Translations under genes and position numbers: made by a program
Shown here: piece by piece, positions 1,505 through 47,842 of the stretch
How positions within the stretch are numbered: position 1 is the stretch's first letter
Layout of the letters: each line of letters starts with the position of its first letter
Virus record (IMG/VR): IMGVR_UViG_3300025319_000005
Location: 124,001-188,000 of that record
Length of the DNA stretch: 64,000 nucleotides
Strand: one strand, 5' to 3'
Notes under the pieces: generated by a model
What the model was told of the DNA's origin: nothing
Database searches by the model: none
The model's input: only the letters and a program-made list of their open reading frames with translations

Positions 1505-2176
1505 ATGGAATTTGATGAATTGATAAGTAATATTGATTTACATTCTCCGTTCCATAAAATGCTGGAAAAAAATAAATTAACAATTACACAAAATGAATTA
1601 TTAAAATATGTTGATGATAATCATTTTACAATAATACATAAAAGAAGGCAAGAAGGAGTTAGTACTGCGTTATCAGTTTATATTTTGTGGTTATTAATTA
1701 ATAATCCGGGACATTCAATTGCTTTGATATTTTCTCAGACAGAAGAGAGGGAAAAATTCAGACAAATTATCAACATGAATTTAACTTTACTTGAAAAAAT
1801 ATTTAAACTTCATGGCTATGATATGGTTTTAACAGCTAAAAACCATAACATAAATGAAACTATATTTCCAAATGGTTCGCGTATTCATTATTGGTCAAAA
1901 AACAATAAACATGCCGGCAGGGGTCATAGTTTAGATTTTGTTTATATATCAGAAGTAACTCACCAAGATAATTACATGGAACTAATTCAATGCCTTTATC
2001 CATGCGTTGCAATGAGTAAAAAAGGTAGATTTCTAATCACTTCATCAACTATTAGGACACTAAAGGAAGACTTCTTTATGAATGGAGAAGGAATTTCCGA
2101 ATACTGGTGTAATGATTTTTTCGATGGTAAAAGATTTGTAATAGTAGAAAAATACGAATTCAATCATAAAGTGTGA
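1505..2176 (+). CDS. stand-alone terminase-large-subunit ATPase-like protein (degenerate) with RFVIVEKY tag
   Basis: KRRQEGVST resembles terminase Walker A; AGRGHSLDFVYISE resembles Walker B with D>S; no nuclease domain. Confidence 0.6.
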   Translation: MEFDELISNIDLHSPFHKMLEKNKLTITQNELLKYVDDNHFTIIHKRRQEGVSTALSVYILWLLINNPGHSIALIFSQTEEREKFRQIINMNLTLLEKIFKLHGYDMVLTAKNHNINETIFPNGSRIHYWSKNNKHAGRGHSLDFVYISEVTHQDNYMELIQCLYPCVAMSKKGRFLITSSTIRTLKEDFFMNGEGISEYWCNDFFDGKRFVIVEKYEFNHKV

Positions 2177-2733
2177 ATTTTAAAATCAAGCTCTTTTGAT
2201 AGTGTGTCATAATAAATTCCTATATCTCTCTGTACACATGAAACATCTCTATATTTTTGAAACATGTCAAATACAAGCATTTCAAACACAGAGCTAGTCA
2301 AGAAATCAACCGAAACTTTATATCCACAAACACAAAGAGCTCCTGTTTTTTTTAAAAAATCTTTTATTCTTGAATTTTCAGCCTGAAGCACAAGACAACT
2401 TCCAAAGAAAATTATCTTATCCTTACAAGAATCCTTTAATATCTCTGATATTTCTTCTAATGTTATATCTTCTTTCCCTATTTTTATTTCTCCCTCATTC
2501 CCATGAAACGCTATATAACAAATAGAATAATTTGAATATTTTTTTAATTTCCATTGTGAAAGATAATAAAAGAGCGATTCTTTAGTCCCACAATGTTTAT
2601 GAATGTATTTAATGTCACAATTTTTTTCTAAAAACATTAAAGAAGCAAATATACTTGATTGTTGACGCAAATCTTTTTGCCAATCCCCTTCAAGACAAAA
2701 AATGTTCTTTTTATATTTTTTAGAGATTTTCAT
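2164..2733 (-). CDS. DUF6642-like protein
   Basis: IFCLEGDW, YIAFHG and FFGSC motifs. Confidence 0.55.
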   Translation of the reverse strand: MKISKKYKKNIFCLEGDWQKDLRQQSSIFASLMFLEKNCDIKYIHKHCGTKESLFYYLSQWKLKKYSNYSICYIAFHGNEGEIKIGKEDITLEEISEILKDSCKDKIIFFGSCLVLQAENSRIKDFLKKTGALCVCGYKVSVDFLTSSVFEMLVFDMFQKYRDVSCVQRDIGIYYDTLSKELDFKIHTL

Positions 2734-2830
2734 TATGTTCTTTATAGTAAATATAGAGGTTTTAATTTAAAATAAGGAATAATTTTTATATTTTTTTACA
2801 TATTTAGTTAAAAAGCTCTAATAACTTAAA

Positions 2831-3076
2831 ATGAAAAGATTTACGGAAAGTGAATTAAAAAAGTATCTACAATCACAAGTGGAAAAAATAGTTATTTCAG
2901 AAGGTTTAATTAAAAAACAGAAAAGTAATCCGGTTCCGGAATTTGAAAGCTCTAAGAAAGAAACTGTATCAGAATCAGATAATATTCAAATTGAGGATGT
3001 AAAATTACTGGCTGAAGAGATAAAACGTATGAAAGAGCTTATTGATTTTAGAAATCCTTTACTAAAAAAAGAATAA
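2831..3076 (+). CDS. small putative late/virion-associated protein
   Basis: TATTTA at 2801-2806; leader ending VISE. Confidence 0.6.
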   Translation: MKRFTESELKKYLQSQVEKIVISEGLIKKQKSNPVPEFESSKKETVSESDNIQIEDVKLLAEEIKRMKELIDFRNPLLKKE

Positions 3077-3114
3077 TAACAACTTCGATAACAATTGCAG
3101 TTATCCAACGAGTT

Positions 3115-3147
3115 TAAAAAACCTTCAATTTTATTGGAGGTTTTTTG
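3115..3147 (+). terminator. intrinsic terminator
   Basis: AAAAACCTTCAA-loop-TTGGAGGTTTTT followed by a T run. Confidence 0.7.
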
Positions 3148-3192
3148 TTTTTATCAATTTATTCCTTTTTATTTGCATTAAATTATTAAACC

Positions 3193-3780
3193 ATGGAAGA
3201 TTCAGAATTTTTTTTAAAAATAGATGCTATGTTAAGTAAAACATTAAAAAACCAAACACTCAAAGAGATGCAAGATGAATTAATAGTTGAAATTACTAAA
3301 AATAAAGAAAACCATAAAGAAAATTTTAATCCTGCATTAGTTTTTAAAAAAATTGGACAAAATATATTTCGAAAATTTCTTGAAACAGAGAGAGGGTATA
3401 CATTACTTTATGATTGTGAAGACAACACTTTTGACCAAACATATATAAAAAATGGGAAAATAGAAGTATTTGAATTAAAAACAGATTACACCCATATGAT
3501 AAATGATGATAATACTGGAGAAATAGCAGATACAAAAAACATAGTAATCGAATTTAAATCCATTGATAAAATGGCTAAATTTTTTGTTACATACTTTCCT
3601 CAAATAAATGAGTTATGGTTAATTAGAACAGAAAAATTAAAGAAGCTTATTGAAGAAGAGAAATATAATTTTCAAACAATAAAAACAGGTGACAATATAA
3701 CTTATTTAACAAATAGAATAGAAATTAAATCAGAATTCAGCATAACAAATGTTTGCAAAGAAGAAATTGTAGTAGTGTAA
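3193..3780 (+). CDS. PD-(D/E)xK nuclease-like protein
   Basis: FD...EVFELKTD and NIVIE pattern; stop overlaps the methyltransferase start (TAATG). Confidence 0.45.
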   Translation: MEDSEFFLKIDAMLSKTLKNQTLKEMQDELIVEITKNKENHKENFNPALVFKKIGQNIFRKFLETERGYTLLYDCEDNTFDQTYIKNGKIEVFELKTDYTHMINDDNTGEIADTKNIVIEFKSIDKMAKFFVTYFPQINELWLIRTEKLKKLIEEEKYNFQTIKTGDNITYLTNRIEIKSEFSITNVCKEEIVVV

Positions 3781-4403
3781 TGGTAAAAAGCATATCATAT
3801 AATGAAGAAGAAATTATAAACTGGATATTAAATCTCCATTGCAAGACTTCTATTGAGCTTGATCCAACATACAGTAAAGGAAATTTCTATAAAGGAAGTA
3901 TTACTAAACCGAAATATAAATTCGACCTATATCCTCAAATTGATGGAGTAGAACGTGCTAATGCTGAAAAATTGCCATTAGAAGACATTAGCATTAATAC
4001 TATAATGTTTGACCCACCATTCTTAGCAACAAAAGGAAAATCTTTAACAATAGACAATGGAAGTAATAAAATAAACAAAAGATTTGGTGTTTATCCTACA
4101 GAAAAAGAATTACACACATTTTATATCAATGCTTTAATTGAATTCCATAGAATATTAAAACCTAATGGTGTCCTTATATTTAAATGTCAAGATAAAGTAA
4201 GTTCCGGAACACAGTATTTTAGTCACAATTTCATAATTAATGAAGCAAATAAATTAGGGTTTTACACAAAAGACATGTTTATATTATTAGCAAAACAAAG
4301 AATAGTGGCAAACTGGCAGTTAAAAAACCAGAAGAATGCCAGAAAATTTCATTCATACTTTCTCGTATTTGAAAAATCGAATAAAACAGTCAAATATATT
4401 TAA
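3780..4403 (+). CDS. amino (N6A/N4C) DNA methyltransferase
   Basis: motif IV IMFDPPF; start reassigned to the ATG at 3780 overlapping the upstream stop. Confidence 0.8.
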   Translation: MVKSISYNEEEIINWILNLHCKTSIELDPTYSKGNFYKGSITKPKYKFDLYPQIDGVERANAEKLPLEDISINTIMFDPPFLATKGKSLTIDNGSNKINKRFGVYPTEKELHTFYINALIEFHRILKPNGVLIFKCQDKVSSGTQYFSHNFIINEANKLGFYTKDMFILLAKQRIVANWQLKNQKNARKFHSYFLVFEKSNKTVKYI

Positions 4404-4405
4404 CT

Positions 4406-4630
4406 TTGGGACATTACATTGATAATTATTTAAAAGCACTTCCGCCTTTTTTAAAACAAAATCAAAACGATGAAAATGTTCTAACAAGGATTGTTATTGT
4501 TGAAAAATATAATATAAATCCTTGGATTTGCTCAGGCAATTTAATAGAAGATTTAAAAAAAGACATGGATTATTTTCGTGCTAAAATGTTTAACTGTGTT
4601 GGAATTCCCTCAAAATACTTCGAAATATAA
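4406..4630 (+). CDS. small protein with RIVIVEKY tag and portal-like C-terminal segment
   Basis: TTG start; DMDYFRAKMFNCVGIPSKYF resembles the T4-type portal DxxYFxxKLxxxLxIP segment. Confidence 0.5.
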   Translation: MGHYIDNYLKALPPFLKQNQNDENVLTRIVIVEKYNINPWICSGNLIEDLKKDMDYFRAKMFNCVGIPSKYFEI

Positions 4631-4659
4631 TATTTTTTTAGATTATTTAATGATAAATC

Positions 4660-5298
4660 ATGTATTTATCTGAATCATATAAAAATCGTCTTAAATTGCT
4701 ATCTGGAGTTATTCTTGAAGATGGTTCTGATGCTGTGAAGCACACTCCTGGTCTTGACGAATTCTTAGAAAAAGTAGTCGAAAGATATAAAATTGACAAC
4801 ACATTTGTTGATATAATAAAACAATTTATTTTAAATTCTGATTGTAAAAAAATTTCAATTGAAAATCTTAAAATGGGTGATGCTGTTGCTATGTCTGATA
4901 GATTAATATTAAGTCCAAATGTTTTCAGAAATCATTTAGGTAGATTTTTATTCATATTATTTCATGAAACAGCTCATCAATATCAATTTAAAAAATATGG
5001 TGAGGATAAAATGCTTTCACTTTATACCGGCGACATTTCAATAAAAGAAGCTGCAGAACTTATGAAAAAAATAGAAGTTATCGCTGATGACTTTGCTGCA
5101 AGAAAAATTAGAGAATTAATTAAATTAAAATTTTTACATCCAAAGCATAGTGAATTCAAAGGATTTTACAAGGATGTTCCTATTGAAAAACTTTCACAAA
5201 CCATTATTCAAATAAAGGATATGTTAAAAAAACTAAACATAACCGAACCATCCAAAATTAGTGAAGTATTTTATAATTGGGTAAAGGCCGACTTATAA
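4660..5298 (+). CDS. HExxH metallopeptidase-like protein with shared N-terminal leader
   Basis: LFHETAHQYQ; leader MYLSESYKNRLKLLSGVILE; TATTTA at 4644-4649. Confidence 0.65.
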   Translation: MYLSESYKNRLKLLSGVILEDGSDAVKHTPGLDEFLEKVVERYKIDNTFVDIIKQFILNSDCKKISIENLKMGDAVAMSDRLILSPNVFRNHLGRFLFILFHETAHQYQFKKYGEDKMLSLYTGDISIKEAAELMKKIEVIADDFAARKIRELIKLKFLHPKHSEFKGFYKDVPIEKLSQTIIQIKDMLKKLNITEPSKISEVFYNWVKADL

Positions 5299-5338
5299 CT
5301 CTAATTATAACTTTTTTCAAGATATTTAATGATAAGTT

Positions 5339-7198
5339 ATGAACTTATCAGAATCGTACAAAAATCGCCTTAAATTATTGTCAGGAATTATTTCTGAGAA
5401 TGTTTCTAATATCCAAGAATTAGATATTGAAGACGTATCTATTCCGGCAAGCTACATAAAAGATTCCTTAAATCCACAAATATGGGATGGTGATAAGTTA
5501 AAACCAGAAATAAGAGAACATTTACTAAATATAGTTAATGGATACAAAAAGCATCTTGAATTAAAAATAGAACCTAAAGATGTTAAATTTTTGGGAAGTA
5601 TGGCTAATTTCAACTGGACAGATGCAAGTGATATTGATGTCCATTTATTTTATGACATAAAAAACATCTCTGATAATACAGAACTTACTAAGCAATTACT
5701 TGAAAGTAAAGGTAAAGATTGGAAAGATAATCACGATATAAAAATAAAAGGTTTCAATGTTGAATTATATGCTCAGGATATTAATGACCAATATCACTCT
5801 GGTGGTGTTTATGATTTACTTAATAACGACTGGATTAGTAAGCCAAAAAAAGAAGATGTTAAAGTTGACAAAGAATTAATAAAAAGAAAATCTTCTTCCA
5901 TTGCTACAAGAATAGAACATGTTGAAAAATTGTCTGATAATAATCCAGATAAAGTTTATAAAGAAGCAAAAAAATTAAAAGATAAAATCAAAAAAATGAG
6001 ACAAGCTGGTTTAGATAAAACTGGTGAATTTTCTGCTGAGAATTTAGTTTTTAAATACTTAAGAAACAATGGTTATCTTGATAGGTTAGGAAAAGTTATC
6101 TCAAAATCTTTTGATAAAAATCTATCACTGGATGAAACTAACATTACTGAAGCTAACCACGATATTGATCCAAGACATTTAAGGAAAGTTATTTTTAAAA
6201 GCAAACGCAGGCCAGAAATGATTATTGTCGTTAGTAAGACTTTAGATGGTAGAATTGTTGACATAGAAAATAAATTCAATATAAATTTCCCATTTAAAGT
6301 AGGACAGATTCTAAATAGAAACCATGAAACATGGGCTTGTAATAATCATTATTTTGTAAATGACAAAGATACTTGTCCGGAAGAAAAAGTATTTGGTATT
6401 AGAAAAAGTGATATTCCTCAAGGACATGAATTAAGAATGATGTTTCCGGGTAAATTTAAAAACGAATCAAAAATGGAATTAAATGAAGAAACCAATAAAC
6501 TTTCCTCGAAAGAATCACTTGAAATAAAAAGGGTAGCTAAAAAAGGAAATTTAAATATTGGAAGATATGATATCAACGAGCTTATTATGGGATTTCAAAT
6601 TGAAAAAGAACATGGTACAGTTAATCCAATAACAAATGTTACTAATGATGATGAAGTGAAAACCTTAAAAATTGCTTTAGCTCATCTTAATGAGGTACCG
6701 GACTATTATACAAAACTTAAAAAGTATGTAGAAAATGGGATTTCAGAATCAAAAAAAGTAAAAAAAAAATTAATGAATGAATCAACAGATTTTGAAGAAA
6801 AACAAAAGCATAAATTAATTATAAAAAAATCCGTTGACAATCTTGACGAAAACAAAATTAATCTTATTAAAAAGTTTATAATTTTTTGTTGTAAAGAATT
6901 AAAGATAGATAGTTCGTGCACTGTATTTTTAACAGGAAAAAGGGGTGGTCCAATTACTACTACTGCAAGTTATAATCCAGAAAATGACCATATTTGGATT
7001 TATACAAAAAACAGGAATATGCTGGCAGATCCAATGAGATCGATGGCGCACGAAATAAGACATTTTAAACAAAAATTAGATGGTGTTTTAACTGAAAAGT
7101 CAGGTGAGGATGGAAGCATTCATGAGAATGAAGCAAATTCTTTTAGTGGATGTATGATTAGAAAGTTTGGTAAAAACAATAGAGAAATTTATCAATAA
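5339..7198 (+). CDS. multi-module protein: leader + Pol-beta-type nucleotidyltransferase + unknown module + DUF5661-like + HExxH peptidase
   Basis: GSMANFNW..SDIDVH; MGFQIEKEH..IALAHLNEVPDYY; MAHEIRH; modules separated by LDE/ITE/LNE/ISE/MNE. Confidence 0.7.
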   Translation: MNLSESYKNRLKLLSGIISENVSNIQELDIEDVSIPASYIKDSLNPQIWDGDKLKPEIREHLLNIVNGYKKHLELKIEPKDVKFLGSMANFNWTDASDIDVHLFYDIKNISDNTELTKQLLESKGKDWKDNHDIKIKGFNVELYAQDINDQYHSGGVYDLLNNDWISKPKKEDVKVDKELIKRKSSSIATRIEHVEKLSDNNPDKVYKEAKKLKDKIKKMRQAGLDKTGEFSAENLVFKYLRNNGYLDRLGKVISKSFDKNLSLDETNITEANHDIDPRHLRKVIFKSKRRPEMIIVVSKTLDGRIVDIENKFNINFPFKVGQILNRNHETWACNNHYFVNDKDTCPEEKVFGIRKSDIPQGHELRMMFPGKFKNESKMELNEETNKLSSKESLEIKRVAKKGNLNIGRYDINELIMGFQIEKEHGTVNPITNVTNDDEVKTLKIALAHLNEVPDYYTKLKKYVENGISESKKVKKKLMNESTDFEEKQKHKLIIKKSVDNLDENKINLIKKFIIFCCKELKIDSSCTVFLTGKRGGPITTTASYNPENDHIWIYTKNRNMLADPMRSMAHEIRHFKQKLDGVLTEKSGEDGSIHENEANSFSGCMIRKFGKNNREIYQ

Positions 7199-10353: not shown

Positions 10354-12561
10354 TCAAAAATCAACAACATTATTATTGTCATTATGTGCAATATTTTGTA
10401 ATTCCTGAACGTTGAAATTAAAATCCAACATTTCGTTTTCTATATGTTTTGCTTGTTGAATTGTTTCTGGCAATTTCAAATCATAACAATTATTATATTC
10501 TTTTATTTCAAAGAATTTTTTAATAAAATCTTTTACTGAGTTAATTATTGTTTCGGTAGCTTTAGCATTATGTTTAGCTTTTAACTGATTAAAAGTATAT
10601 ATTGTTTTTTTTGAACCATCAGAATCAATATTCGAATATTGTATATTTATACTAAGAGTAGCTCTATCCATAGTTTCTAAATCTTCAACAGAATATATTA
10701 CAAAACTTCCTTTTGCAACATTTGCACAATAAGTTTTAACACAATGACTCATTACTGATGATTCTTCATAAAATTTTTCCGGAGTATCAATTAAATTAAA
10801 TTTGATATTATCAAAAATTCCTTCTGTATGTCTGAATTTATCTATGTGAATTTTTAAGTCTTCACTTAATTTTTTATCTGCAATCAACCTAAAAGAAAGA
10901 CTCAAAGAATTATGCATATCAACTAAAGCATCAAAAGTTTTTGATTTTAATATTTCAGTTAATTGAATCTCTACATTTATTAACATAAATATAGTGTCCA
11001 TATACAATTGAAGTATTTTTTCAAAATTAGCATCAGAGGTATGAAAGATTTTTAAAATATGGCAAAAATGTTTGTGGGTTATTTTAAAATGTCCTATTCT
11101 GTTAATGCTTTGATTATACATATTTTGCACACAAACAATAAAGTCGTAAGCATCTTTTATATTATTATTTAATATTATTTTGTCAACTGTTTCAATTTCG
11201 TCAAAAGCAGAATTGTTATGTAAGAATCCATAAAACACTTGAGCAACTTCATCAAAATTTCTTTCTAAAAATAAGTCTACATAAAATTTTCTAAATTGTA
11301 TATTTTTCAATCTCAATTTAATATCTTTATATATTGGAACCCTTGTGTCAACCTGTACTGTCGGATGAGTTGTTATTGAAAATAATAAATCTTTTTTTTG
11401 GGGATGAGCTTTTAATTTTCTCTTTCTTTTTTTCTCTTCTGTTTTTATGTATTTAATTATTTTTGTATGTTTCGAAAATTCAGAAGTTACTTTACTTTTA
11501 AACATAGTTTCCAAAATTGTTTTTGGATTGGTTGGATTTTTCTTTTTTAAGTTTGTCAAAGAACACACAAAAGAAGAATTTGTTAATAAATTAAGAAATT
11601 TATCCGGACCATAAGTAAGAATTAATGTCACGATGGGCTGATAAACTGAAAGTGACAACATTATACATAATCTTCTTTTTAAATATTGTATCCAAATATA
11701 TCTGCTTGTAGACATATTTCCATTATAGTTACTGAGCGATTCTGGCTTATAATGACAATTATTTAAAAAAGATTCTTCACCACAATTAGTTGGAGAGCTA
11801 CTTAAATTTCTAAATAAAGAATTCAAATACATTTCATCACGCTCTTTTTCTAATATTAAATTTATTCTATTAACATCCCTCTGGTCACATTTTGATTCTA
11901 CTAGTTCACAAAATTTTATTAAAGGTTTTATTACCTGTCTTTCAAAAAGTCCTTGCGAAATTACATTTTCATATAATGCATTTAATGTCATATTGTTAAC
12001 TATTGAAGAACAATGTTTAACAAGAAATCTAAACGGCACTGTAATTATTTTTTCCTTAATTTTTATCTTTATGGTATCGCTTTTTTTAGAAAGGTATAAT
12101 GAACGATTACTAATATTCCTAAAAATCAATTTTTTTGTTGTAACAGAGACAAACACTATAGTTGCAAAAGAATATAAAGCATAAAAATTTTCTTTTTCAA
12201 CTACACCAAATCTTTTTGATGTAACATTTCCTTCTATTTCTTTAGAGTAAATTAACTTTACACCGGAAAGGGATTTGTACTCTTTACTGCAACTATTGCA
12301 AATTGTTTTTTGACTTGAAATTATTTTACCGTATCCATTTCTACTTATTGCTTCAAAAGGAATTTCAGTCATTTGACCACAAGTACAATATAAAGCCCAT
12401 CTTTTATTGGAATAATTGTTTTGAAAATGGCTGAATTCTTTTTTTACATTTGTTTCTGGTGTGCTTTCCACGTCATCAAAAGACGGATTAGAAGAATCGT
12501 TATATTGTGGAGTCCTAACTAAATCAAATATAAGAGCAAGATATGGATTTTTTTCTTTCAA
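10354..12561 (-). CDS. PcfJ-like domain protein
   Basis: C-terminal EESSVMSHCVKTY..RATL..QLKAKHN; N-terminal Cys pairs. Confidence 0.65.
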   Translation of the reverse strand: MKEKNPYLALIFDLVRTPQYNDSSNPSFDDVESTPETNVKKEFSHFQNNYSNKRWALYCTCGQMTEIPFEAISRNGYGKIISSQKTICNSCSKEYKSLSGVKLIYSKEIEGNVTSKRFGVVEKENFYALYSFATIVFVSVTTKKLIFRNISNRSLYLSKKSDTIKIKIKEKIITVPFRFLVKHCSSIVNNMTLNALYENVISQGLFERQVIKPLIKFCELVESKCDQRDVNRINLILEKERDEMYLNSLFRNLSSSPTNCGEESFLNNCHYKPESLSNYNGNMSTSRYIWIQYLKRRLCIMLSLSVYQPIVTLILTYGPDKFLNLLTNSSFVCSLTNLKKKNPTNPKTILETMFKSKVTSEFSKHTKIIKYIKTEEKKRKRKLKAHPQKKDLLFSITTHPTVQVDTRVPIYKDIKLRLKNIQFRKFYVDLFLERNFDEVAQVFYGFLHNNSAFDEIETVDKIILNNNIKDAYDFIVCVQNMYNQSINRIGHFKITHKHFCHILKIFHTSDANFEKILQLYMDTIFMLINVEIQLTEILKSKTFDALVDMHNSLSLSFRLIADKKLSEDLKIHIDKFRHTEGIFDNIKFNLIDTPEKFYEESSVMSHCVKTYCANVAKGSFVIYSVEDLETMDRATLSINIQYSNIDSDGSKKTIYTFNQLKAKHNAKATETIINSVKDFIKKFFEIKEYNNCYDLKLPETIQQAKHIENEMLDFNFNVQELQNIAHNDNNNVVDF

Positions 12562-38461: not shown

Positions 38462-40573
38462 TTACAAATTATCATTATTATTTTGTAAATTCCTTATGAA
38501 TTCAATAGGATTAACTCCTCCCAAATCTTCAATACGTTGAATGTTTTGAATGAAATTATCTAAATTTAATTCAGATTCATTTCCTCTCGAAGTAGAAAGT
38601 CTTAAATCTGCAAGCTCTTTATAAGAAATTTCTTTTTCTTGTAAAAATTCCATTATATTAGTTTTAAATCGGTCAGAACCTTGTCTATTGCAAGTTGCTT
38701 TAACTTGGTCAAATTCTAATTTTCCATATTTATCAGCTTTCAATCCAAGCATAAATTTTTCAGGTTCCCCTCCCTCTCTTTTTTCGTCAATATCTTCTAC
38801 TATGCATAACACATATTGAGAATTAGAAACTCTATTTACATATGAGCCGGCACAATTTTTCATGTCCTGCGAAGCCTTAAGGAGTAATTCTGGTGTTCTT
38901 ATCAATCTTACTTTTAAGTTTTTTTCATATTCTTCAAGAATTTTATATTGTGAAACAAAACTTACAAATTCTTTATTTTTAGCATCATTAGAAAGTAAAT
39001 TAAAATGGTCAATTAATTTATTATGATATTCTTCTAATTCCTCTATTTTTTTTATTTTGTGGAATTCTTTATTTGAATCCCAGTTGAGCGCTCTAATCAT
39101 TCTAAGACTATCGTCGTAACTCGTCAAATCAAAACTCTTCAATAAAGTATAATCTAAAGGTATTTTTGACAATTCTTCCTCATTTACTTCTTGAATTTGT
39201 TCTGTGTCTTTAATTAAAAATCTTTCTCTGGCATATTTCAATTCAGTATTAGTTTTATTAAAAGAAAATAGTTTTTTTCTTTCTAAAGAACTTAAGGCCA
39301 ACGAAATTATTTGATTAATTTTAAGCATATTCATATCTGCTCTAAATTCTAAGCTATACCATAAATTAACTAATAAATTAACATTATTTTTTTTAACAAG
39401 TTCTATAAGTTCATTAAATGAAATGAATTTAGTATATTTTATTAAAATTTTATAATCAGAAAATCTTTCTATTATATTAAAAACATATGGGGAAACACTT
39501 TTTTCTTTTATGTCTTCACGCAAAAATCTTTCACCATCTTTATTTTTTCCTGTTTGATTTTCATTGTTGTTAAATCTGGAAGCATCAAACTTAAACGTTA
39601 CCTCTCTTCCGCTTTCAGCCTTAAATACATAACCCATTTTTTCAGAATCATAAGCATCTAATTCTTTGCTTATTTCTTCGTTTTTATAATTTACAAGATA
39701 ATTGAAAATTTTAAGAGGAGATGTTGCTCCATTATCTGATAACTCTTGTGGATTAGGAAGTTTGCAATCATTCATCATATCAAAAAGAAATATAGTTCCT
39801 TTTGTTAATGCTATTGTAGATAAGTTTGAATAGCAAATTATTCCAAAAAATATTGAGGCTACTTTTATAATAATGTCCAGTCCTGATTTACCGACCATTT
39901 GACTCATTAATTCATCTATTATATTTATGTTCTGTGAATCGGATACAAAATTAGCCATTCTATTTATAAATAAATGAACATCAAATAATCGTTCAGTTGT
40001 CTTTACTTCTCCATAAAGAAAAAACTCTAAAACAATTGACATCACCCTATCAAGATTAAATTCAATTTCTTCCTTGCTGAAATCTTTAAAATAAAGTTTT
40101 TTGGCAGTTTTATCAAATTTTATCCAAGATAAACTTTCATTTAATTCTAAAGAAGGTTCATCTTTTGAAATGACGAAAGGCATTGACCTTTTTTTATCAA
40201 AATTTATTTTTGCTATAAATCTTTGTTTTATTAATTTAACATCATTTTCATCTTCATAAAAACAATATGACTCAAAAAATTGTTTTTCACATTCTTGAAT
40301 AATTCCAGCCGTTTCCTTAGTTGAATAATCTGTATCGCATTTTTCGCATTTAAGAGAAAATCTGGCCATACTATTCTCATCGAATAAACCTGTAATATCA
40401 CCTATATCAGCTCCTTCTTTTATACTTACTTTCATTTCTGAGGCTACGACCTTTCTATCTTGTTTGATTAAATGGCCACATTTACAAAAAAATAAATCTG
40501 TATCATTTTTTGCGTCATCATAATGAAAAGTAAACTTATTTAATATTTCTTCTTCTTTGATTAATTCTCTCAT
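38462..40573 (-). CDS. PcfJ-like domain protein (paralog of 10354-12561)
   Basis: ASQDMKNCAGSY..FDQVKATCN; N-terminal CKCG/CEKC. Confidence 0.65.
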   Translation of the reverse strand: MRELIKEEEILNKFTFHYDDAKNDTDLFFCKCGHLIKQDRKVVASEMKVSIKEGADIGDITGLFDENSMARFSLKCEKCDTDYSTKETAGIIQECEKQFFESYCFYEDENDVKLIKQRFIAKINFDKKRSMPFVISKDEPSLELNESLSWIKFDKTAKKLYFKDFSKEEIEFNLDRVMSIVLEFFLYGEVKTTERLFDVHLFINRMANFVSDSQNINIIDELMSQMVGKSGLDIIIKVASIFFGIICYSNLSTIALTKGTIFLFDMMNDCKLPNPQELSDNGATSPLKIFNYLVNYKNEEISKELDAYDSEKMGYVFKAESGREVTFKFDASRFNNNENQTGKNKDGERFLREDIKEKSVSPYVFNIIERFSDYKILIKYTKFISFNELIELVKKNNVNLLVNLWYSLEFRADMNMLKINQIISLALSSLERKKLFSFNKTNTELKYARERFLIKDTEQIQEVNEEELSKIPLDYTLLKSFDLTSYDDSLRMIRALNWDSNKEFHKIKKIEELEEYHNKLIDHFNLLSNDAKNKEFVSFVSQYKILEEYEKNLKVRLIRTPELLLKASQDMKNCAGSYVNRVSNSQYVLCIVEDIDEKREGGEPEKFMLGLKADKYGKLEFDQVKATCNRQGSDRFKTNIMEFLQEKEISYKELADLRLSTSRGNESELNLDNFIQNIQRIEDLGGVNPIEFIRNLQNNNDNL

Positions 40574-43809: not shown

Positions 43810-44076
43810 TTAAGAGAATATCATTCTCGTATTTGATTGGAAAATACAATAATAATCTCCATCTTCGTATTTTGTATTCCAAATACCATTTTTTGTTTTT
43901 TCATCCCACTCAGCAACAGCTTCTTGTTTTGATACATTTTTTGTTATATCAATCCATAAATTATCAAATCTGTCATATAGCCTTACAATATATTCTTCTT
44001 TTTCTTCTAAAGAATCAATAATTCGATGACGTTCTAATATTCTTTGATTCTTTTCATACTTTGTTCTTTTGCTCAT
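43810..44076 (-). CDS. hypothetical protein
   Basis: 88-aa ORF. Confidence 0.55.
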   Translation of the reverse strand: MSKRTKYEKNQRILERHRIIDSLEEKEEYIVRLYDRFDNLWIDITKNVSKQEAVAEWDEKTKNGIWNTKYEDGDYYCIFQSNTRMIFS

Positions 44077-44077
44077 A

Positions 44078-44734
44078 TTATTTACAGTTTTTTAAATAAA
44101 CACATTCCATATGTTTTTTATTAGTTCCCATCATCTCTTTTAATGATTTAAAATTTAACCATTTATCATTTTGATTACCACAAACTATAACCTGTGTATC
44201 TAAAGAATTTATTATATTTTTAAGCTTATCATAATCAACTTTCCAATATGTGTATTTGTGAGATTGAACGGAATAAGGTGGGTCTATAAAATATGTGAAA
44301 TTTTCATTTACTGGCATGGTCATAGCATCCTTTTGATAAATTTTCCAATGTTTTATTTTATATACTTCGCCTGCAATCCTTTTTCTATCTTTTTCCCACG
44401 TACTCCTTACGCTCATTATGTTATTTGGTCGCGCCGCTCCCCTATTTCCTTGATAACCTATTAACCACCTTTCTTCATTACTTAAACTTTTTATGGTTCG
44501 TAAATCAAAACCAGGAGGAGCATCTGGTAAATTTAAAATATCATTTGCAGTTGCACCTTGCAAATATTTCCAGATTTTAAAAACTTTATCATATGTTTCA
44601 TAAAGAATTACATTTTTTTCAAAATATTCTAATGAATATCTTGCAAATCCAGCAAATGGCTCTATAATAGTGTCTTTTTCTGGAGCTGGATAACATCCTT
44701 TGACTTTCGATTTGGTACCGTAATAGCTAATCAT
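44078..44734 (-). CDS. D12/Dam-class N6-adenine DNA methyltransferase
   Basis: SYYGTKSK, IIEPFAG, YFIDPPY. Confidence 0.85.
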   Translation of the reverse strand: MISYYGTKSKVKGCYPAPEKDTIIEPFAGFARYSLEYFEKNVILYETYDKVFKIWKYLQGATANDILNLPDAPPGFDLRTIKSLSNEERWLIGYQGNRGAARPNNIMSVRSTWEKDRKRIAGEVYKIKHWKIYQKDAMTMPVNENFTYFIDPPYSVQSHKYTYWKVDYDKLKNIINSLDTQVIVCGNQNDKWLNFKSLKEMMGTNKKHMECVYLKNCK

Positions 44735-44822
44735 GTTTTTATGTTTTTAATTGTTTATGCAAAAATACTATTTTTTTATTAACATTGTTGTTTGCTGGAT
44801 ATTTTTTAATTAAAATTGCACT

Positions 44823-45608
44823 ATGGAAAATAATGTTACAAAAATAGAAAAAGAAGGCGTTTCATATATATGTGCCCCTGATTTAAAAAAACAACATATT
44901 AACAAATTCATAAGCTTCACTCCGTTTGAGATAGAAAGATGCGCTCAATTTTCTATTGATATGATGAACAATAAGAACAAACCCAGAGGAAAACACGCAA
45001 AAGAAAACAGGCAAAGAGATGATGAAGAATATCTTTTCAACTGGTTTATTGGCTCATTGGGAGAAGTTGCAACCTATAACAAAGCATTAAAATCAACAAT
45101 AGATTGTTCTCCAGTTGATTTAACAATGATTGAAGGTTTTGATAATCAAGATTTTATATTTTTTGATAAATTTCCGATAAGCGTAAAATCGACTAAGCAT
45201 TATGGAGGAAACATGTTATTAGAAGACGATAAATATGATTTAGACGCACTTTATTTGCATAGTGAAGGTGGTAAAACTACTCCTTTGGAAGTAACTGCAT
45301 TTATAGGCGTTGCAGTTGGATTAGATAAATATAGATTTGATGAAGGTCTTAAAAAAGAAGATTACAAAAAATTTCTAATGTCATTAAACCCAAAATATCA
45401 CATTTATGGTTTTTTAGGAAAAAATGATTTAAAAAAAGAAAAGGAAAAAGGGAATCTTTTTTTAAAACACACAATAATAAGCGGAAAAACAAAAATGGAA
45501 GAAAATAATGTTGTTATACGTTTAGATGCATTAAGACCATTTGAAGGGCTCATAAAATTAAAAGAAAAAATTTTAAAAGAAAAAAATGAAGAAATTGAAA
45601 TTAGGTAG
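44823..45608 (+). CDS. putative restriction endonuclease-like protein
   Basis: GSLGEVA..D..FDNQDF..ISVKST resembles PD-(D/E)xK; overlaps the C5 methyltransferase. Confidence 0.4.
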   Translation: MENNVTKIEKEGVSYICAPDLKKQHINKFISFTPFEIERCAQFSIDMMNNKNKPRGKHAKENRQRDDEEYLFNWFIGSLGEVATYNKALKSTIDCSPVDLTMIEGFDNQDFIFFDKFPISVKSTKHYGGNMLLEDDKYDLDALYLHSEGGKTTPLEVTAFIGVAVGLDKYRFDEGLKKEDYKKFLMSLNPKYHIYGFLGKNDLKKEKEKGNLFLKHTIISGKTKMEENNVVIRLDALRPFEGLIKLKEKILKEKNEEIEIR

Positions 45609-46527
45609 TCTATACTCTGGAGTAGAAGGGATAGGGTTAGGATTTGAACAGGCTGGTTCAGAAACTTTATGGGCAAATGAAATGGATGCGAACGCATGCA
45701 AAACAATAATGGCTAATTTCAACAACAAAGTATATGAATGTAAAGTTGAAGAATTAAAACCAGATTCTTTGGTGCCAGTTGATATTTTAACTGCAGGTTT
45801 TCCATGCCAGAGCTTCAGTATTGCTGGATATCAAAAAGGGTTTGAAGATGAAAGGGGACATCATTTTTTTGAAGTTATTCGATTAGCAAAAATAATTAAA
45901 CCAAAAGTAATATTTCTTGAAAATGTTAAAAACCTTAAATCACACGACAAAGGTAAAACATTTCAAATAATGTGCGATACACTTACTAATATTGGTTATA
46001 ATTTTAAATACGATATTTTAAATACATACGAATATGGAAATATTCCACAAAACAGAGAGCGAATTTATATAGTCTGTTTTAGAAATGATTTAGATATAAC
46101 AAAATTTGAATTTCCAAATAAAATACCTTTAACCTTATCTTTTGAAGAGTTATTAGAAAATAATGTAGATGAAAAATTTTATTATAGAGAAGATAAATAC
46201 AACTACACACAATTAGCAGAAACAATGACCAAAACAGATACTGTTTATCAATGGAGAAGAGTCTATGCTAGGGAGAACAAAAAAGGATTATGTCCAACGT
46301 TAACCGCAAACATGGGAACTGGAGGTCACAATGTTCCGCTTATTTTAACAAAAGAAGGAATAAGAAAATTAACTCCAAGAGAATGTTTTAATTTACAAGG
46401 TTTTCCGTTGAATTTTATTTTACCAGATAAAATGTCTAATGCTCAATTGTACAAGCAGGCAGGAAATAGCGTAAGTGTTCCAGTAATCAAAAGAATAGCT
46501 GAAAACATATTAAATGCATTGAATTAA
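45586..46527 (+). CDS. dcm: C5-cytosine DNA methyltransferase
   Basis: LYSGVEG (motif I variant), AGFPCQSFS, LENVKNL, QNRERIY, YKQAGNSV. Confidence 0.93.
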   Translation: MKKLKLGSLYSGVEGIGLGFEQAGSETLWANEMDANACKTIMANFNNKVYECKVEELKPDSLVPVDILTAGFPCQSFSIAGYQKGFEDERGHHFFEVIRLAKIIKPKVIFLENVKNLKSHDKGKTFQIMCDTLTNIGYNFKYDILNTYEYGNIPQNRERIYIVCFRNDLDITKFEFPNKIPLTLSFEELLENNVDEKFYYREDKYNYTQLAETMTKTDTVYQWRRVYARENKKGLCPTLTANMGTGGHNVPLILTKEGIRKLTPRECFNLQGFPLNFILPDKMSNAQLYKQAGNSVSVPVIKRIAENILNALN

Positions 46528-46769
46528 TATTCAATTTCTCCTGATTTATAAACCGTGAATGTTGTTGAAATATACTGTATCGGTTTTGTGACTTTAACAT
46601 TAATATACATTACGCCTTTATTTTTTTCTGGATATTTTTCAAATATTACAAATCTGGTGTTTTCATCATGATTAGCGAAATGCATTTCATCAATTTTGTA
46701 ATCACCCGTAGCTAATAGTTCAACAATTTTGCCAACAGAATTTAATGATTCATCATTATTTTTTTTCAT
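46524..46769 (-). CDS. small protein with RFVIFEKY tag and tail-sheath-like C-terminal segment
   Basis: YINVKVTKPIQYISTTFTVYKSG resembles the sheath C-terminal I.IKP....EFI.L.F.....G. Confidence 0.45.
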   Translation of the reverse strand: MKKNNDESLNSVGKIVELLATGDYKIDEMHFANHDENTRFVIFEKYPEKNKGVMYINVKVTKPIQYISTTFTVYKSGEIEY

Positions 46770-47017
46770 GATTTCATATTTTTAAACATTAAGCTTTCCA
46801 TTGAGACTTGAAATTCTGTTTCAAATACAGGACTAGCCACTAAATCATAAGAAAATAATGAAATATCTATTTCACTTGTATAAATTCCAGGACTTACAAA
46901 CATTTTAGGACTAGCCCACCAAATAGGAACGTTTCCATAACAATCAAATTTGGGAGTATAATAACGTCTACCAAAGTATTTTTCAATTATAACAAATCTT
47001 GTAAATATGTTTTCCAT
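46766..47017 (-). CDS. small protein with RFVIIEKY tag
   Basis: FSYDLVASP weakly resembles the gp21-type prohead protease D.V..PS segment. Confidence 0.45.
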   Translation of the reverse strand: MENIFTRFVIIEKYFGRRYYTPKFDCYGNVPIWWASPKMFVSPGIYTSEIDISLFSYDLVASPVFETEFQVSMESLMFKNMKS

Positions 47018-47023
47018 TATTTA

Positions 47024-47842
47024 TTACAAATTTCTATTTCTACCATCAAATATCATCATCATCTCTGTAGAACCGCTTCTTACTGGGATAAAATAATCAT
47101 TTTCAAATACTATGCTATTTAAACTAGTTGAGCCTGATACATTATTGTTCCACCGATTAACTTTTGGTTTATATTTTTCAAAAAGAACAATTCTTGAATA
47201 AACATCTTCTCTTTCAAATGTGTAATCAAAATAATTTAACATTCCAGTAGATGCTGATAATGGTTGAACCGGGACGAGATCAAGAGCTATAGTTTGTGCA
47301 AAAACTTGCCTTATCATAGGAAATACTATTCCGTCAAAATTTGTTTCTTCCTTTTTTTTCTTGAATATTTTATTCCAGATAGAAACAAAAAATGATTTTA
47401 TTTTTAAGAATATCTTTTTCCACTTAGAGTCAAAACTTCTACTACTAACACCAATAATAGAAGATGAAAATTTACGTATTAAATCATTAGTTTCTTTTGT
47501 AGTTAATTTTCCAACCGGAACTGTATATGTTCTTTGTATCGGACTATTAACATCATTTATAAAACAAGATGCTTGATTTTCATATAATTGAACAATATTA
47601 CTTTTTTGATAACCGTGTAAACCATCAAGGAATCCTGAGTTTTTCCAATTTTTATAAATAATCTTTCTTTGATTTTCTAAATCTATGGATTTGTTGTGTT
47701 TTTCAAAGAGAACTTCTCTGGTTTCAGAACTGCTTTCTTCTTCTACTTTTTTGGTTTCATTTACGAGATTTGTCCAATTACTAATAACATTGAACACAGA
47801 ATTATCTCTTTCGGTTATTTTTATATCTAAAGGCATGTGCAA
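47024..47842 (-). CDS. truncated gp23-like major capsid protein paralog with RIVLFEKY tag
   Basis: WKNSGFLDGL..LYENQA and FPMIRQVFAQTIALDLVPVQPL..TGMLNYFDY match T4-like MCP N-terminal motifs; only 272 aa. Confidence 0.65.
   Translation of the reverse strand: MHMPLDIKITERDNSVFNVISNWTNLVNETKKVEEESSSETREVLFEKHNKSIDLENQRKIIYKNWKNSGFLDGLHGYQKSNIVQLYENQASCFINDVNSPIQRTYTVPVGKLTTKETNDLIRKFSSSIIGVSSRSFDSKWKKIFLKIKSFFVSIWNKIFKKKKEETNFDGIVFPMIRQVFAQTIALDLVPVQPLSASTGMLNYFDYTFEREDVYSRIVLFEKYKPKVNRWNNNVSGSTSLNSIVFENDYFIPVRSGSTEMMMIFDGRNRNL

What the first reader, a model, noticed from the sequence alone, without database searches (positions are those of the whole stretch)
1505..47842. Five ORFs built from virion-assembly protein fragments share an R[FI]V[IL]xEKY tag
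Seen: RFVIVEKY (1505-2176), RIVIVEKY (4406-4630), RFVIFEKY (46524-46769), RFVIIEKY (46766-47017) and RIVLFEKY (47024-47842) occur in otherwise unrelated proteins, and I saw the motif in no other ORF. By motif recognition the partners are a degenerate terminase ATPase, a portal segment, a tail-sheath C-terminus, possibly a prohead-protease segment and gp23-like capsid N-terminal motifs (capsid and terminase calls firmer; the others tentative). Established: Avs STAND ATPases sense terminase and portal, and CapRel senses major capsid protein. Inference: a tagged library of structural-protein mimics acting as immune decoys or as dominant-negative inhibitors of competing phages, with the tag as a common docking or degradation signal.
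Basis: inference. Interest (0 to 1): 0.8.

Follow-up and report, generated by a model that had tools for sequence, protein, structure and literature searches.

The report
Tagged head-protein fragment cassettes, huge phage
A huge groundwater phage and its relatives encode small, mostly disordered proteins built from the best-conserved snippets of T4-type head-assembly proteins. The snippets are flanked or separated by one short tag that resembles a T4 prohead-protease/capsid-targeting site. I found no described precedent, and their function is untested.

Summary
R[FI]V[IL]xEKY occurs exactly five times in the six-frame translation (0 in 200 shuffles), always in the named ORFs. ORF A also holds a sixth, looser copy (REVLFEKH).

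Fragment calls:
- Firm: terminase ATPase (inactive Walker A/B) and major capsid protein N-terminus.
- Supported through relatives: portal and prohead-protease pieces.
- Not supported: tail sheath.

The ORFs belong to conserved families. Orthologues at 36-63% identity keep intact frames, and the tag core (V..EK; R too in the terminase family) is invariant. All come from huge phages; the window's terminase-like protein also sits on a 503-kb contig.

The tag lies at termini or between modules, in segments predicted disordered. Module content changes between phages at the same genomic slot. One relative brackets two divergent copies of the same capsid segment with three tags.

My best guess (confidence about 0.3) is that the tag is a T4-type prohead targeting/processing signal, since it contains the I/LxE protease consensus, like the T4 capsid targeting sequence. 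The phage's own head genes and any expression data could not be obtained.

The parts
1505..2176 (+). ORF1505, 223 aa: stand-alone terminase-large-subunit ATPase-like domain, catalytically degenerate, with a C-terminal tag
   Evidence: Pfam Terminase_6N E 6e-5, PHROG terminase 3e-13. AlphaFold pLDDT 79, and Foldseek best hit is T4 gp17 (3cpe) at E 2.4e-10, TM 0.69. Family of about 220-aa orthologues at 42-63% identity.
1640..1666 (+). Degenerate Walker A: KRRQEGVST, with V where T4 gp17 has the P-loop lysine (QLGKTT)
   Evidence: phmmer alignment to T4 gp17 chains. G-V-S-T is conserved across the family.
1937..1954 (+). Degenerate Walker B: FVYISE, with S where T4 has the aspartate of YIDE; the glutamate is kept
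   Evidence: Alignment to gp17. S149 and E150 are invariant in alignment A3.
2132..2155 (+). Tag copy RFVIVEKY, 6 residues from the C-terminus of ORF1505
   Evidence: R210, V212, E215 and K216 are invariant in 18 orthologues. Residues 204-223 have pLDDT below 50, i.e. a disordered tail.
4406..4630 (+). ORF4406, 74 aa (TTG start): portal-motif copy, tag, W..SG.L motif, then portal-motif copy (..DYFRAKMFNCVGIPSKYF)
   Evidence: BLASTP to P0018 residues 17-64 at E 5e-7, and to P0006. The equivalent module of P0006 hits Pfam Portal_T4 positions 278-311 at E 2.3e-7. The ORF alone gives no significant hit. It is called as a gene in two public assemblies.
4487..4510 (+). Tag copy RIVIVEKY
47024..47842 (-). 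ORF A, 270-272 aa: N-terminal region, tag 1, capsid propeptide motif, variable linker, protease Ser-motif piece plus basic amphipathic insert, capsid N-arm, tag 2, tail
   Evidence: Orthologue family P0001-P0018. hmmsearch of the family profile against true T4-type capsid proteins gives 1e-12 for each of two segments that lie 4-10 residues apart in true capsid proteins. AlphaFold pLDDT 47, no globular fold.
47696..47719 (-).
   Evidence: Conserved as TR[EKN]VL[FI]EK in orthologues. The profile aligns it with the extreme N-terminus (..LLxE..) of true capsid proteins.
47543..47656 (-). Capsid (gp23-type) propeptide-like segment W.NSGFLDGL...NI.QLYENQAS
   Evidence: Domain hit 1.8e-12 to the L009 capsid protein, residues 24-69.
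47432..47455 (-). IGVSSRSF: prohead-protease serine-motif piece (SSR invariant in the family)
   Evidence: Family profile against T4-type proteases, E 8e-4 in a small local database. Orthologue P0010 aligns collinearly with the LR756500 protease from the Ser motif to the TYDLVADPGF motif, pairwise E 3e-6.
47204..47344 (-). Capsid N-arm segment (..FPMIRQVFAQTIALDLVPVQPLSASTG..), equivalent to T4 gp23 residues 95-128
   Evidence: PDB profile search aligns it to T4 gp23 95-128. 2.5e-12 to true capsid proteins. Pfam Gp23 positions 3-61 of 376.
47171..47194 (-). Tag 2 of ORF A (RIVLFEKY), at a fixed 21-22 residues after the DLV.VQP motif
   Evidence: The spacing is 21-22 residues in 23 of 29 tagged relatives (20-24 in 28).
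46766..47017 (-). ORF B, 83 aa: tag at residues 7-14 (MENIFT-RFVIIEKY), then an unassigned segment, then LFSYDLVASPVFE (protease Asp-motif piece at 46817-46861)
   Evidence: BLASTP to the LR756500 prohead protease at E 2e-4, 14 of 28 identical. No other significant hit. Same frame as ORF A, separated by TAA TAA ATA.
46976..46999 (-). Tag copy RFVIIEKY
46524..46769 (-). ORF C, 81 aa: unassigned N-terminal half, tag, unassigned C-terminal half. The tag plus P (TRFVI.EKYP) is the only fully conserved block.
   Evidence: Alignment A4 of four orthologues. No similarity to sheath or any solved structure, none to T4-type head/tail modules, and ESM Atlas pLDDT is 0.42.
46632..46655 (-). Tag copy RFVIFEKY
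2164..2733 (-). Neighbour: DUF6642 protein with a CHAT/caspase-like predicted fold, convergent with and overlapping the tag-coding end of ORF1505. Possible tag-processing protease (speculative).
   Evidence: Pfam DUF6642 at 1.4e-32. Structure neighbours are CHAT/Peptidase_C14 at TM 0.66-0.78. The adjacency is kept in L193-L196 and L198; in L199 the neighbouring ORF is cut by the contig end.

Best explanation
The five ORFs are members of conserved families of tag-bearing cassette proteins found in huge phages with T4-type heads.

Shown:
- Each protein is a largely disordered string, or in ORF1505 a folded but catalytically dead terminase ATPase domain.
- Modules copied from T4-type head-morphogenesis proteins are flanked or separated by one linear motif, about [ED][DN][VI][YF][TSK]-R-x-V-[IL]-x-E-K-[YHF].
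- The motif sits at an N-terminus, at a C-terminus or between modules.

Inferred:
- The motif is an exposed recognition and processing signal of the T4 capsid-targeting-sequence type. V-[IL]-x-E contains the I/LxE consensus after which T4-type prohead proteases cut.
- The tag would dock the proteins to the assembling prohead core, as the CTS (capsid targeting sequence, MKTYQEFIAE) does for T4 internal proteins and the propeptides do for Alt.
- The prohead protease would then cut after the glutamate, releasing or trimming the payloads inside the head.
- The capsid-propeptide, N-arm, portal and protease pieces would help by binding the same core partners as their parent proteins.
- The payloads vary from phage to phage like T4 internal proteins and lie beside DNA methyltransferase genes. 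I therefore expect a conflict-related role after ejection or during assembly.
For: - The motif is far beyond chance and conserved at the protein level.
- It is the best-conserved block of each family: R210/V212/E215/K216 are invariant in the terminase-like family, V219/E222/K223 in the ORF A family, and TRFVI.EKYP in the ORF C family.
- It lies in low-confidence, presumably exposed segments.
- In ORF B it starts at residue 7. In a 518-kb phage one ORF has it at residues 11-18, and three tandem paralogues with no virion-protein similarity end in tag-like motifs ([RK].[VI][IL].EK) followed by at most 8 residues.
- Tag 1 of the ORF A family aligns with the extreme N-terminus (..LLxE..) of true T4-type capsid proteins, with conserved spacing to the W..GLL.GL motif.
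- The literature states that T4 gp21 cuts after Glu in I/LxE (PMC12991175). It also states that the 10-residue CTS targets unrelated proteins into the head, with residues 8 and 10 (I, E) needed for processing; that Alt and gp21 also have C-terminal propeptides; and that CTS-bearing proteins vary between T4 relatives (PMC9026906).
- Module turnover at one syntenic slot and shuffling between ORFs are documented.
- Methyltransferase genes lie at 3753-4403, 44078-44734 and 45586-46527.
Against: - No cleavage, packaging or expression data exist; no RNA run was listed as holding the locus.
- The phage's own head genes were not recovered, so I could not check whether its scaffold or capsid use the same extended motif.
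- The tag has invariant R, V and K that the loose T4 consensus does not require. P1' is Lys rather than the small residue seen at the T4 gp23, gp24 and IP sites (my own knowledge).
- None of 1,532 ORFs from about 85 T4-type head-module loci, and none of 120 full-length capsid proteins of the LR756500 clade, carries the tag.
- At a C-terminal tag, cleavage would remove only 2-12 variable residues.
- There is no T4 late-promoter box in front of ORF A or ORF1245/1505, and the promoter scan was at background.
- A position-specific scoring matrix (PSSM) built from the tags finds no significant match in true capsid N-termini.
Confidence: 0.3

Rival explanations
1. One reading: a 'poly-epitope' library. 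The tag-bracketed modules would be peptide-level mimics of the most conserved, interface-forming or sensor-exposed segments of T4-type head proteins, plus a dead terminase ATPase. They would act in the cytoplasm in one of two ways. They could be decoys for host systems that sense such segments or the prohead protease. Or they could be dominant-negative caps that poison head assembly or packaging of co-infecting T4-type phages. The tag would serve as a common handle for docking, turnover or cleavage.
For: - The modules are the best-conserved stretches of their parent proteins. The capsid N-arm piece aligns to T4 gp23 95-128. That lies in the first quarter of gp23, where the conserved 29-residue Gol segment sits; the Gol segment binds EF-Tu and triggers the Lit protease (PMC3014915). 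The placement at about residues 93-122 is my own knowledge.
- One relative carries two divergent copies of the same capsid mid-segment between three tags.
- A different fragment occupies the same slot in three lineages.
- The terminase-like protein is a conserved pseudo-ATPase.
- Linker patches recombine and evolve at dN/dS of about 0.6-1, while modules and tags stay fixed.
- The loci sit among methyltransferase and other accessory genes.
- Host sensors of capsid, portal, terminase and of prohead-protease activity are documented (PMC13581612, PMC12991175).
Against: - Avs sensors recognise whole folds over extended interfaces (PMC13581612), whereas ORFs A-C are predicted disordered.
- A Gol-like peptide would be expected to trigger, not block, a Lit-type system.
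- No PADLOC or other family hit was found for the tagged ORFs.
- The capsid family these fragments most resemble carries the same conserved segment (AQTIGLDLVPV against AQTIALDLVPV). If the phage's own capsid belongs to it, self-poisoning must be avoided somehow.
- Tag-like endings also occur on non-virion-like proteins.
Confidence: 0.25
2. The tag is the recognition or cleavage site of a co-encoded protease that is not the prohead protease. Two candidates lie nearby: the DUF6642 CHAT/caspase-like protein that overlaps the 3' end of ORF1505, and the two HExxH (ImmA/IrrE/CapP-like) proteins just downstream of ORF4406. The invariant R and K would then be candidate P1 residues, or the tag a docking strand.
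For: - DUF6642 is adjacent to the terminase-like gene in the relatives where the neighbour could be identified (L193-L196, L198), and it has CHAT/caspase structural neighbours.
- In the 518-kb phage and in L198, the tagged capsid-fragment ORF sits directly upstream of the homologue of the 619-aa HExxH protein.
- There is a weak CapP hit for the protein at 4660-5298 (E 0.007).
- R and K are invariant, which the T4 I/LxE rule does not explain.
Against: - The ORF A-B-C cluster has no such neighbour.
- DUF6642 is on the opposite strand.
- Protease activity is unproven for all three candidates. The HExxH assignments rest on my reading of motifs plus one weak hit.
Confidence: 0.1
3. The ORFs are decaying remnants of a duplicated or captured T4-type head-gene module, shrunk by deletions. 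The tag would be a junction scar or a piece of the ancestral gene, and there would be no present function.
For: - In ORF A orthologues the protease C-terminal piece is followed directly by the capsid N-arm. This is the order protease, scaffold, capsid with the middle deleted.
- The neighbouring N6/N4 methyltransferase matches only the first half of its profile.
- Recognition bias favours conserved motifs.
Against: - Frames are intact and lengths similar in 18+18 orthologues at 36-63% identity, with invariant columns.
- The exhaustive search returned 364 proteins at E<=0.001 (true capsid proteins included); 43 of the short ones among the 156 examined carry the tag.
- The terminase-like domain folds with high confidence.
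- The tag is the most conserved element and recurs within single proteins up to three times.
- The capsid propeptide piece precedes the protease piece, which is not the gene order.
Confidence: 0.07
4. The conserved unit works at the DNA or RNA level (recombination site, regulatory or structured RNA), and the amino-acid motif is a by-product.
For: The copies at 2.1/4.5 kb and at 46.6-47.2 kb are in inverted orientation. The AT-rich codons make the DNA copies look alike.
Against: - There are synonymous differences between copies, and position 5 is kept hydrophobic with different codons.
- No similarity extends beyond about 45 nt.
- No Rfam family other than tRNA was found.
- No joints or rearrangements occur at the tags in four DNA runs.
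- Across orthologues the protein motif is kept while the DNA drifts.
Confidence: 0.03

Closest known systems
T4 capsid targeting sequence (CTS) of internal proteins IPI-III, and the gp21-cleaved propeptides of Alt, gp21, gp24 and gp23
   Same: A short conserved peptide ending in hydrophobic-[IL]-x-E is shared by otherwise unrelated, fast-evolving accessory proteins of a phage with a T4-type head. Both N- and C-terminal propeptides are known. CTS proteins differ between related phages (PMC9026906; I/LxE rule in PMC12991175).
   Different: Here the tag is longer and stricter (invariant R, V, K, aromatic). It is often internal or repeated, and it is followed by Lys. The payloads are themselves pieces of head-assembly proteins. 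Packaging and cleavage are not shown, and the sequence is not similar to MKTYQEFIAE.
Encapsulin cargo-loading peptides
   Same: A short terminal peptide on a flexible linker docks diverse cargo proteins to the inside of an HK97-fold shell (my own knowledge). The C-terminal, disordered tag of the terminase-like family and of the 518-kb phage's paralogues has this layout.
   Different: No sequence resemblance. Encapsulin peptides are not protease sites. The system here is a tailed phage.
Gol peptide of T4 gp23 (Lit/EF-Tu exclusion system)
   Same: The most recurrent module of the tagged proteins is the capsid N-arm that aligns to T4 gp23 95-128. This overlaps the short, highly conserved gp23 segment that binds EF-Tu (PMC3014915; residue numbers from my own knowledge).
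   Different: Gol is part of the full capsid protein, not a separate gene. Whether the fragments bind EF-Tu is unknown.
Assembly-interference proteins of phage satellites (P4 Sid, SaPI CpmAB/Ppi, PLE TcaP)
   Same: These are accessory proteins that act on another phage's capsid or terminase machinery (my own knowledge). They would be the nearest functional analogue if the dominant-negative reading is right.
   Different: They are folded proteins unrelated to their targets. They are not strings of target-derived peptides and carry no shared tag.
Multi-core peptide precursors (for example cyanobactin PatE-type RiPP precursors, neuropeptide precursors)
   Same: Several variant copies of a short peptide sit in one precursor, each flanked by the same recognition sequence (my own knowledge). 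L198 and P0234 have this layout.
   Different: No modifying enzymes are nearby. The cores here are 35-60-residue copies of capsid segments.

Membership tests
T4-type CTS-bearing internal head proteins | Short targeting peptide ending in I/L-x-E that the prohead protease cuts after | tested here: met
   All 6 window copies and 77 distinct related instances have [VLI]-[LIVM]-x-E. Motif presence only; cleavage was not tested.
T4-type CTS-bearing internal head proteins | Peptide lies at the extreme N-terminus (about 10 residues) | tested here: not met
   Only ORF B (residues 7-14) and one ORF of the 518-kb phage come close. The others are internal or C-terminal.
T4-type CTS-bearing internal head proteins | Protein is packaged in the head and processed by the prohead protease | not testable with these tools
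   No virion proteome and no RNA run.
Terminase large subunit (T4 gp17 type) | ATPase fold of the N-terminal domain | tested here: met
   Foldseek hit to 3cpe at E 2.4e-10, TM 0.69. Pfam and PHROG hits.
Terminase large subunit (T4 gp17 type) | Walker A lysine and Walker B aspartate | tested here: not met
   GVST in place of GKTT, and YISE in place of YIDE, in all 18 orthologues.
Terminase large subunit (T4 gp17 type) | C-terminal RNase-H-like nuclease domain | tested here: not met
   The protein ends at 223 aa. The family is 210-226 aa long.
Major capsid protein Gp23 (PF07068, HK97 fold) | Full HK97-fold body (A and P domains) | tested here: not met
   Only profile positions 3-61 of 376 are matched. 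No globular model, pLDDT 47.
T4-type portal (PF07230) | Portal fold across the 433-position profile | tested here: not met
   Only positions 278-311 match in P0006. ORF4406 alone gives no hit.
T4-type prohead serine protease (gp21) | His-Ser-Asp catalytic set in one chain | tested here: not met
   The Ser-motif piece is in ORF A and the Asp-motif piece in ORF B (together in P0010). No His-motif region is aligned.
Contractile tail sheath | Any significant sequence or profile similarity of ORF C to a sheath protein | tested here: not met
   PDB phmmer and profile searches, a local head/tail-module database and the ESM Atlas all gave nothing.
Known anti-defence or defence proteins | Match to a described family | tested here: not met
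   No PADLOC hit for ORF1505 or ORF A. No Pfam or PHROG hit beyond the virion families. No dedicated anti-defence library was available.

The most novel reading that the evidence does not exclude
Huge phages carry an evolvable 'poly-epitope' arsenal. It consists of tag-delimited, shuffled and duplicated variant copies of the most conserved peptides of T4-type head proteins, plus a dead terminase ATPase. These would work as peptide-level decoys for host immunity that senses such peptides or the prohead protease (Lit/Gol-type, protease-tripwire CBASS). Alternatively they would act as dominant-negative poisons of competing T4-type phages, with the tag as the common processing or docking handle.
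Probability: 0.22. Interest if true: 0.9.

Novelty: new variant of a known kind. Interest (0 to 1): 0.72.

Why it matters
Suppose the tag is a head-targeting/processing signal. It would then extend the T4 CTS principle to huge environmental phages. It would give a sequence handle for finding their ejected or internal proteins. It would also show that pieces of capsid, portal, protease and terminase can be recycled as targeting or effector modules.

Suppose instead the peptides are decoys or dominant-negative inhibitors. That would be a new class of phage weapon built from the very patterns that bacterial immunity and rival phages depend on.

Either way, the family is conserved and apparently undescribed: 364 proteins at E<=0.001 in the exhaustive search (true capsid proteins included), and 43 tagged short proteins among the 156 hits examined. 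The motif is simple and searchable, and the predictions are directly testable: cleavage after the tag glutamate, presence in virions, and effects on defence systems or on co-infecting phages.

Tried and rejected
- Tail-sheath identity of ORF C: no support from single-sequence or profile searches of PDB, a local database of about 85 T4-type module loci, LR756500, or the ESM Atlas.
- Origin of the tag from a native segment of a virion protein. By eye it can be matched to the T4 gp23 C-terminal strand, a portal helix, the first strand of the terminase nuclease domain, the capsid E-loop strand and the capsid N-terminal R..IV..W motif. A position-specific scoring matrix (PSSM) built from 74 tags finds no significant site in 217 true capsid N-termini, and the tag regex is absent from 1,532 head-module ORFs. 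I treat these resemblances as unproven.
- LAGLIDADG/intein remnant: one weak I-CreI-derived hit (domain E 91), dropped.
- LemA similarity of the ORF A family (E 0.005): not pursued, probably compositional.
- 'Portal-like' reading of ORF A linker patch 1 and of its tail. The patch evolves at dN/dS of about 1, and the tail aligns equally well with capsid residues 128-185. Left unassigned.
- DGR-type mutagenesis of the variable patches: substitutions are not adenine-biased. The patches have pS of about 0.25 against about 0 elsewhere, so they are recombinant imports.
- Introns or structured RNA: Rfam finds only tRNAs.
- Recombination at the tags: no credible joints in four DNA runs.
- Timing of expression: no RNA run holds the locus, the sigma-70 scan was at background, and no TATAAATA box lies upstream.
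- Finding the phage's own capsid, portal and terminase genes failed. I tried four collection scans, one homologue search keyed on contig size and one exhaustive search. The 212-kb contig may not contain them, since the genome is probably about 500 kb.
- Closest annotated phages: none. Megablast found no match, and tblastn found only true terminases and one true capsid gene.

Full report
**Source and setting**

The window is bases 124,001-188,000 of IMG/VR contig IMGVR_UViG_3300025319_000005, which is 212,632 bp long. It has 28.6% G+C and 16-17 tRNA genes. Its genes include thymidylate synthase, PcfJ-like proteins and several DNA methyltransferases. An identical terminase-like protein occurs on public contigs of up to 503 kb. 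The DNA is held by many groundwater, soil and sediment metagenomes. This is therefore an accessory region of an abundant huge phage. No annotated phage record is close.

**The observation**

None of 200 shuffled windows had a single copy. Codons differ synonymously between copies, and the fifth residue varies among V, I and F, so selection acts on the peptide.

A looser sixth copy (REVLFEKH) sits near the N-terminus of ORF A. Across 77 distinct instances collected from relatives, the motif extends to about [ED][DN][VI][YF][TSK]-R-x-V-[IL]-x-E-K-[YHF].

**What the ORFs are**

*ORF1505.* This is a genuine terminase-large-subunit ATPase fold. The evidence is Pfam, PHROG, alignment to T4 gp17, an AlphaFold model with pLDDT 79, and a Foldseek best hit to T4 gp17 at E 2e-10. 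It lacks the Walker A lysine, the Walker B aspartate and the whole nuclease domain. All 18 aligned orthologues (42-63% identity, 210-226 aa) share these features. All end in a conserved, predicted-disordered tail (..EYWC.DFFDGK-RFVIxEK) followed by 2-12 variable residues.

*ORF A.* It belongs to a family of 166-329-aa proteins. The family profile matches true T4-type capsid proteins in two pieces, at 1e-12 each: the propeptide motif and the N-arm. The N-arm aligns to T4 gp23 95-128.

Between the two capsid pieces lies an insert of about 65 residues. It holds a GVSSRG motif and a basic amphipathic stretch. In orthologue P0010 this region aligns collinearly with a huge-phage prohead protease, from its serine motif to TYDLVADPGF, at pairwise E 3e-6. 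Some orthologues carry, further upstream, a module that hits Pfam Portal_T4 at E 2e-7. The AlphaFold model is essentially disordered (pLDDT 47).

*ORF4406.* It matches that portal-plus-tag module of P0018 at E 5e-7.

*ORF B.* It carries the protease aspartate motif (E 2e-4).

*ORF C.* It has no detectable relative among virion proteins. Its only fully conserved block is the tag itself.

They are supported for portal, weakly supported for protease, and fail for sheath.

**Anatomy of the family**

Synteny of ORF A, the small tagged ORFs and a C5 methyltransferase is kept in four other assemblies. The tag flanks or separates modules:

- ORF A orthologues have one tag before the capsid propeptide piece. 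A second tag follows the DLV.VQP motif at 21-22 residues in 23 of 29 tagged relatives, and at 20-24 in 28.
- Modules move between ORFs. The portal module is a separate ORF in the window but is fused to the ORF A homologue in P0006, P0018 and P0159.
- The slot between the homologues of window genes 3193-3780 and 5339-7198 is occupied differently in three lineages. The window has ORF4406, along with the truncated methyltransferase and the 212-aa HExxH protein. A 518-kb phage has a 132-aa ORF with two tags that interrupt a capsid mid-region (Pfam Gp23, E 1e-15). A third lineage has a 164-aa ORF in which three TRKV[LM].EK tags bracket two divergent copies of the same capsid segment.
- In the 518-kb phage, three tandem paralogues with no virion-protein similarity end in tag-like motifs ([RK].[VI][IL].EK), and another ORF begins with one.

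By contrast, none of 120 full-length capsid proteins of the LR756500 clade, and none of 1,532 ORFs from about 85 T4-type head-module loci, contains the tag. The exhaustive protein search returned 364 proteins at E<=0.001, true capsid proteins included. Of the short ones among the 156 examined, 43 carry the tag.

**Population data**

A near-identical relative (L005) differs from the window only in two patches of ORF A. The same two alleles co-exist within single metagenomes. The patches have synonymous divergence of about 0.25 against about 0 elsewhere, and dN/dS of about 1.0 and 0.6. They are recombinant, weakly constrained linkers, whereas the modules and tags are fixed. No reads or contigs join tag sites.

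**Mechanism**

What is shown:
- A conserved, protein-level, exposed linear motif is shared by otherwise dissimilar accessory proteins.
- Most of the payloads are copies of head-morphogenesis segments.

The best-supported reading, which is inference, is that the tag is a T4-type prohead targeting/processing signal. The reasons are these:

- It contains V-[IL]-x-E. T4 gp21 cuts after Glu in I/LxE (PMC12991175).
- The T4 capsid targeting sequence is a 10-residue peptide ending in I-A-E. It loads unrelated, fast-evolving proteins into the head and is then removed. C-terminal propeptides are known for Alt and gp21 (PMC9026906).
- Tag 1 of ORF A aligns with the N-terminal LLxE of true capsid proteins.

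Against this reading:
- The extra invariant R, V and K, and a Lys at P1'.
- The absence of the tag from the true head proteins I could examine.
- The lack of any expression, packaging or cleavage data.

I put it at about 0.3.

However, disorder argues against fold mimicry, and self-poisoning would have to be avoided. I put it at about 0.25.

Other options are less likely:
- A different protease as the tag's partner. Candidates are the DUF6642 CHAT/caspase-like protein overlapping ORF1505's end, or the ImmA/IrrE/CapP-like HExxH proteins next to ORF4406.
- Inert gene debris.
- A nucleic-acid element.

The remaining probability is 'something else'.

**Comparison and novelty**

The nearest known system is the T4 CTS/internal-protein paradigm. 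The layout also recalls encapsulin cargo-loading peptides and multi-core peptide precursors. None of these has tags that are internal and repeated, or payloads made of head-protein fragments. I found no description of such proteins in the paper searches I ran. I rate it a new variant of a known kind under my preferred reading. It would be categorically new if the decoy/poison reading holds.

**Limits**

- The phage's own head genes were not recovered despite several scans.
- There is no transcript evidence.
- The sheath, LAGLIDADG, LemA and 'native origin of the tag' leads gave nothing significant.

Noticed in passing
window 2164-2733 (-): DUF6642 protein (Pfam 1.4e-32) whose predicted structure resembles CHAT/caspase folds (TM 0.66-0.78). 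It is convergent with and overlaps the tag-coding end of ORF1505. The adjacency is kept in L193-L196 and L198; in L199 the neighbouring ORF is cut by the contig end. A phage-borne caspase-like protease candidate.
   Followed up: partly
window 3753-4403 (+): An N6/N4 DNA methyltransferase that matches only positions 1-110 of the 221-position Pfam profile, so the AdoMet-binding half seems missing. It stops 2 nt before ORF4406.
   Followed up: no
window 4660-5298 (+) and 5339-7198 (+): Two proteins share the N-terminal motif SESYKNRLKLLSG. Each has an HExxH...E..A[ND].F pattern typical of ImmA/IrrE-type metallopeptidases. There is a weak PADLOC CapP hit (E 0.007), and the larger one also has DUF5661. 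Its homologue follows the tagged capsid-fragment ORF in two other phages.
   Followed up: partly
window 44078-46527: A type II methyltransferase (44078-44734, -), an unknown 261-aa gene (44823-45608, +) and a C5 methyltransferase (45586-46527, +) lie next to ORF C. In L003/L004 a single C5 methyltransferase follows ORF C on the same strand. The window and L005 therefore carry an inverted or replaced, R-M-like cassette.
   Followed up: partly
window 47022-47155, 47393-47630, 48269-48500: Assembly bubbles: two alleles co-exist at similar depth within single metagenomes. They lie in two patches of ORF A and at the 5' end of the upstream 155-aa gene (with small indels at about 48300-48310). ORF B, ORF C and the methyltransferase are invariant.
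   Followed up: yes
window 47017-47026: ORF A and ORF B are in the same reading frame, separated only by TAA TAA ATA. ORF B and ORF C overlap by ATGA.
   Followed up: no
window 48855-61089: A cluster of 16-17 tRNA genes on the minus strand lies just beyond the ORF A-C cluster. tRNA-Lys at 58698-58785 is unusually long (88 nt). One extra tRNA at 48855-48933 is seen by Rfam only.
   Followed up: no
window 12567-13679 (-); 10354-12561 (-) and 38462-40573 (-): The thymidylate synthase is about 100 residues longer than the Pfam profile (370 aa against 266 positions). There are also two paralogous proteins of about 700 aa with PcfJ-like C-terminal domains.
   Followed up: no
L197 47199-47714 (-) (LR756500.1, 462-kb huge phage): An untagged 168-aa paralogue of the capsid N-terminus (propeptide motif plus ..SLLPL..) lies about 26 kb from the true capsid gene. 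Short capsid-N-terminus paralogues therefore also exist without the tag.
   Followed up: no
L153 10046-12065 (IMGVR_UViG_3300014205_000170, 518 kb): Three tandem paralogues of 160-210 aa with no virion-protein similarity each end in tag-like motifs ([RK].[VI][IL].EK) followed by at most 8 residues. A 121-aa ORF begins MTITLLDNNT-RNVILEKF.
   Followed up: partly
L135 2981-6469 (-), L178, L123: An unrelated family of proteins of about 1,160 aa in other viral contigs contains RFV[FI].EKY in a conserved context (..DDDG.VD.P..F...). This is probably a chance resemblance to the tag.
   Followed up: no
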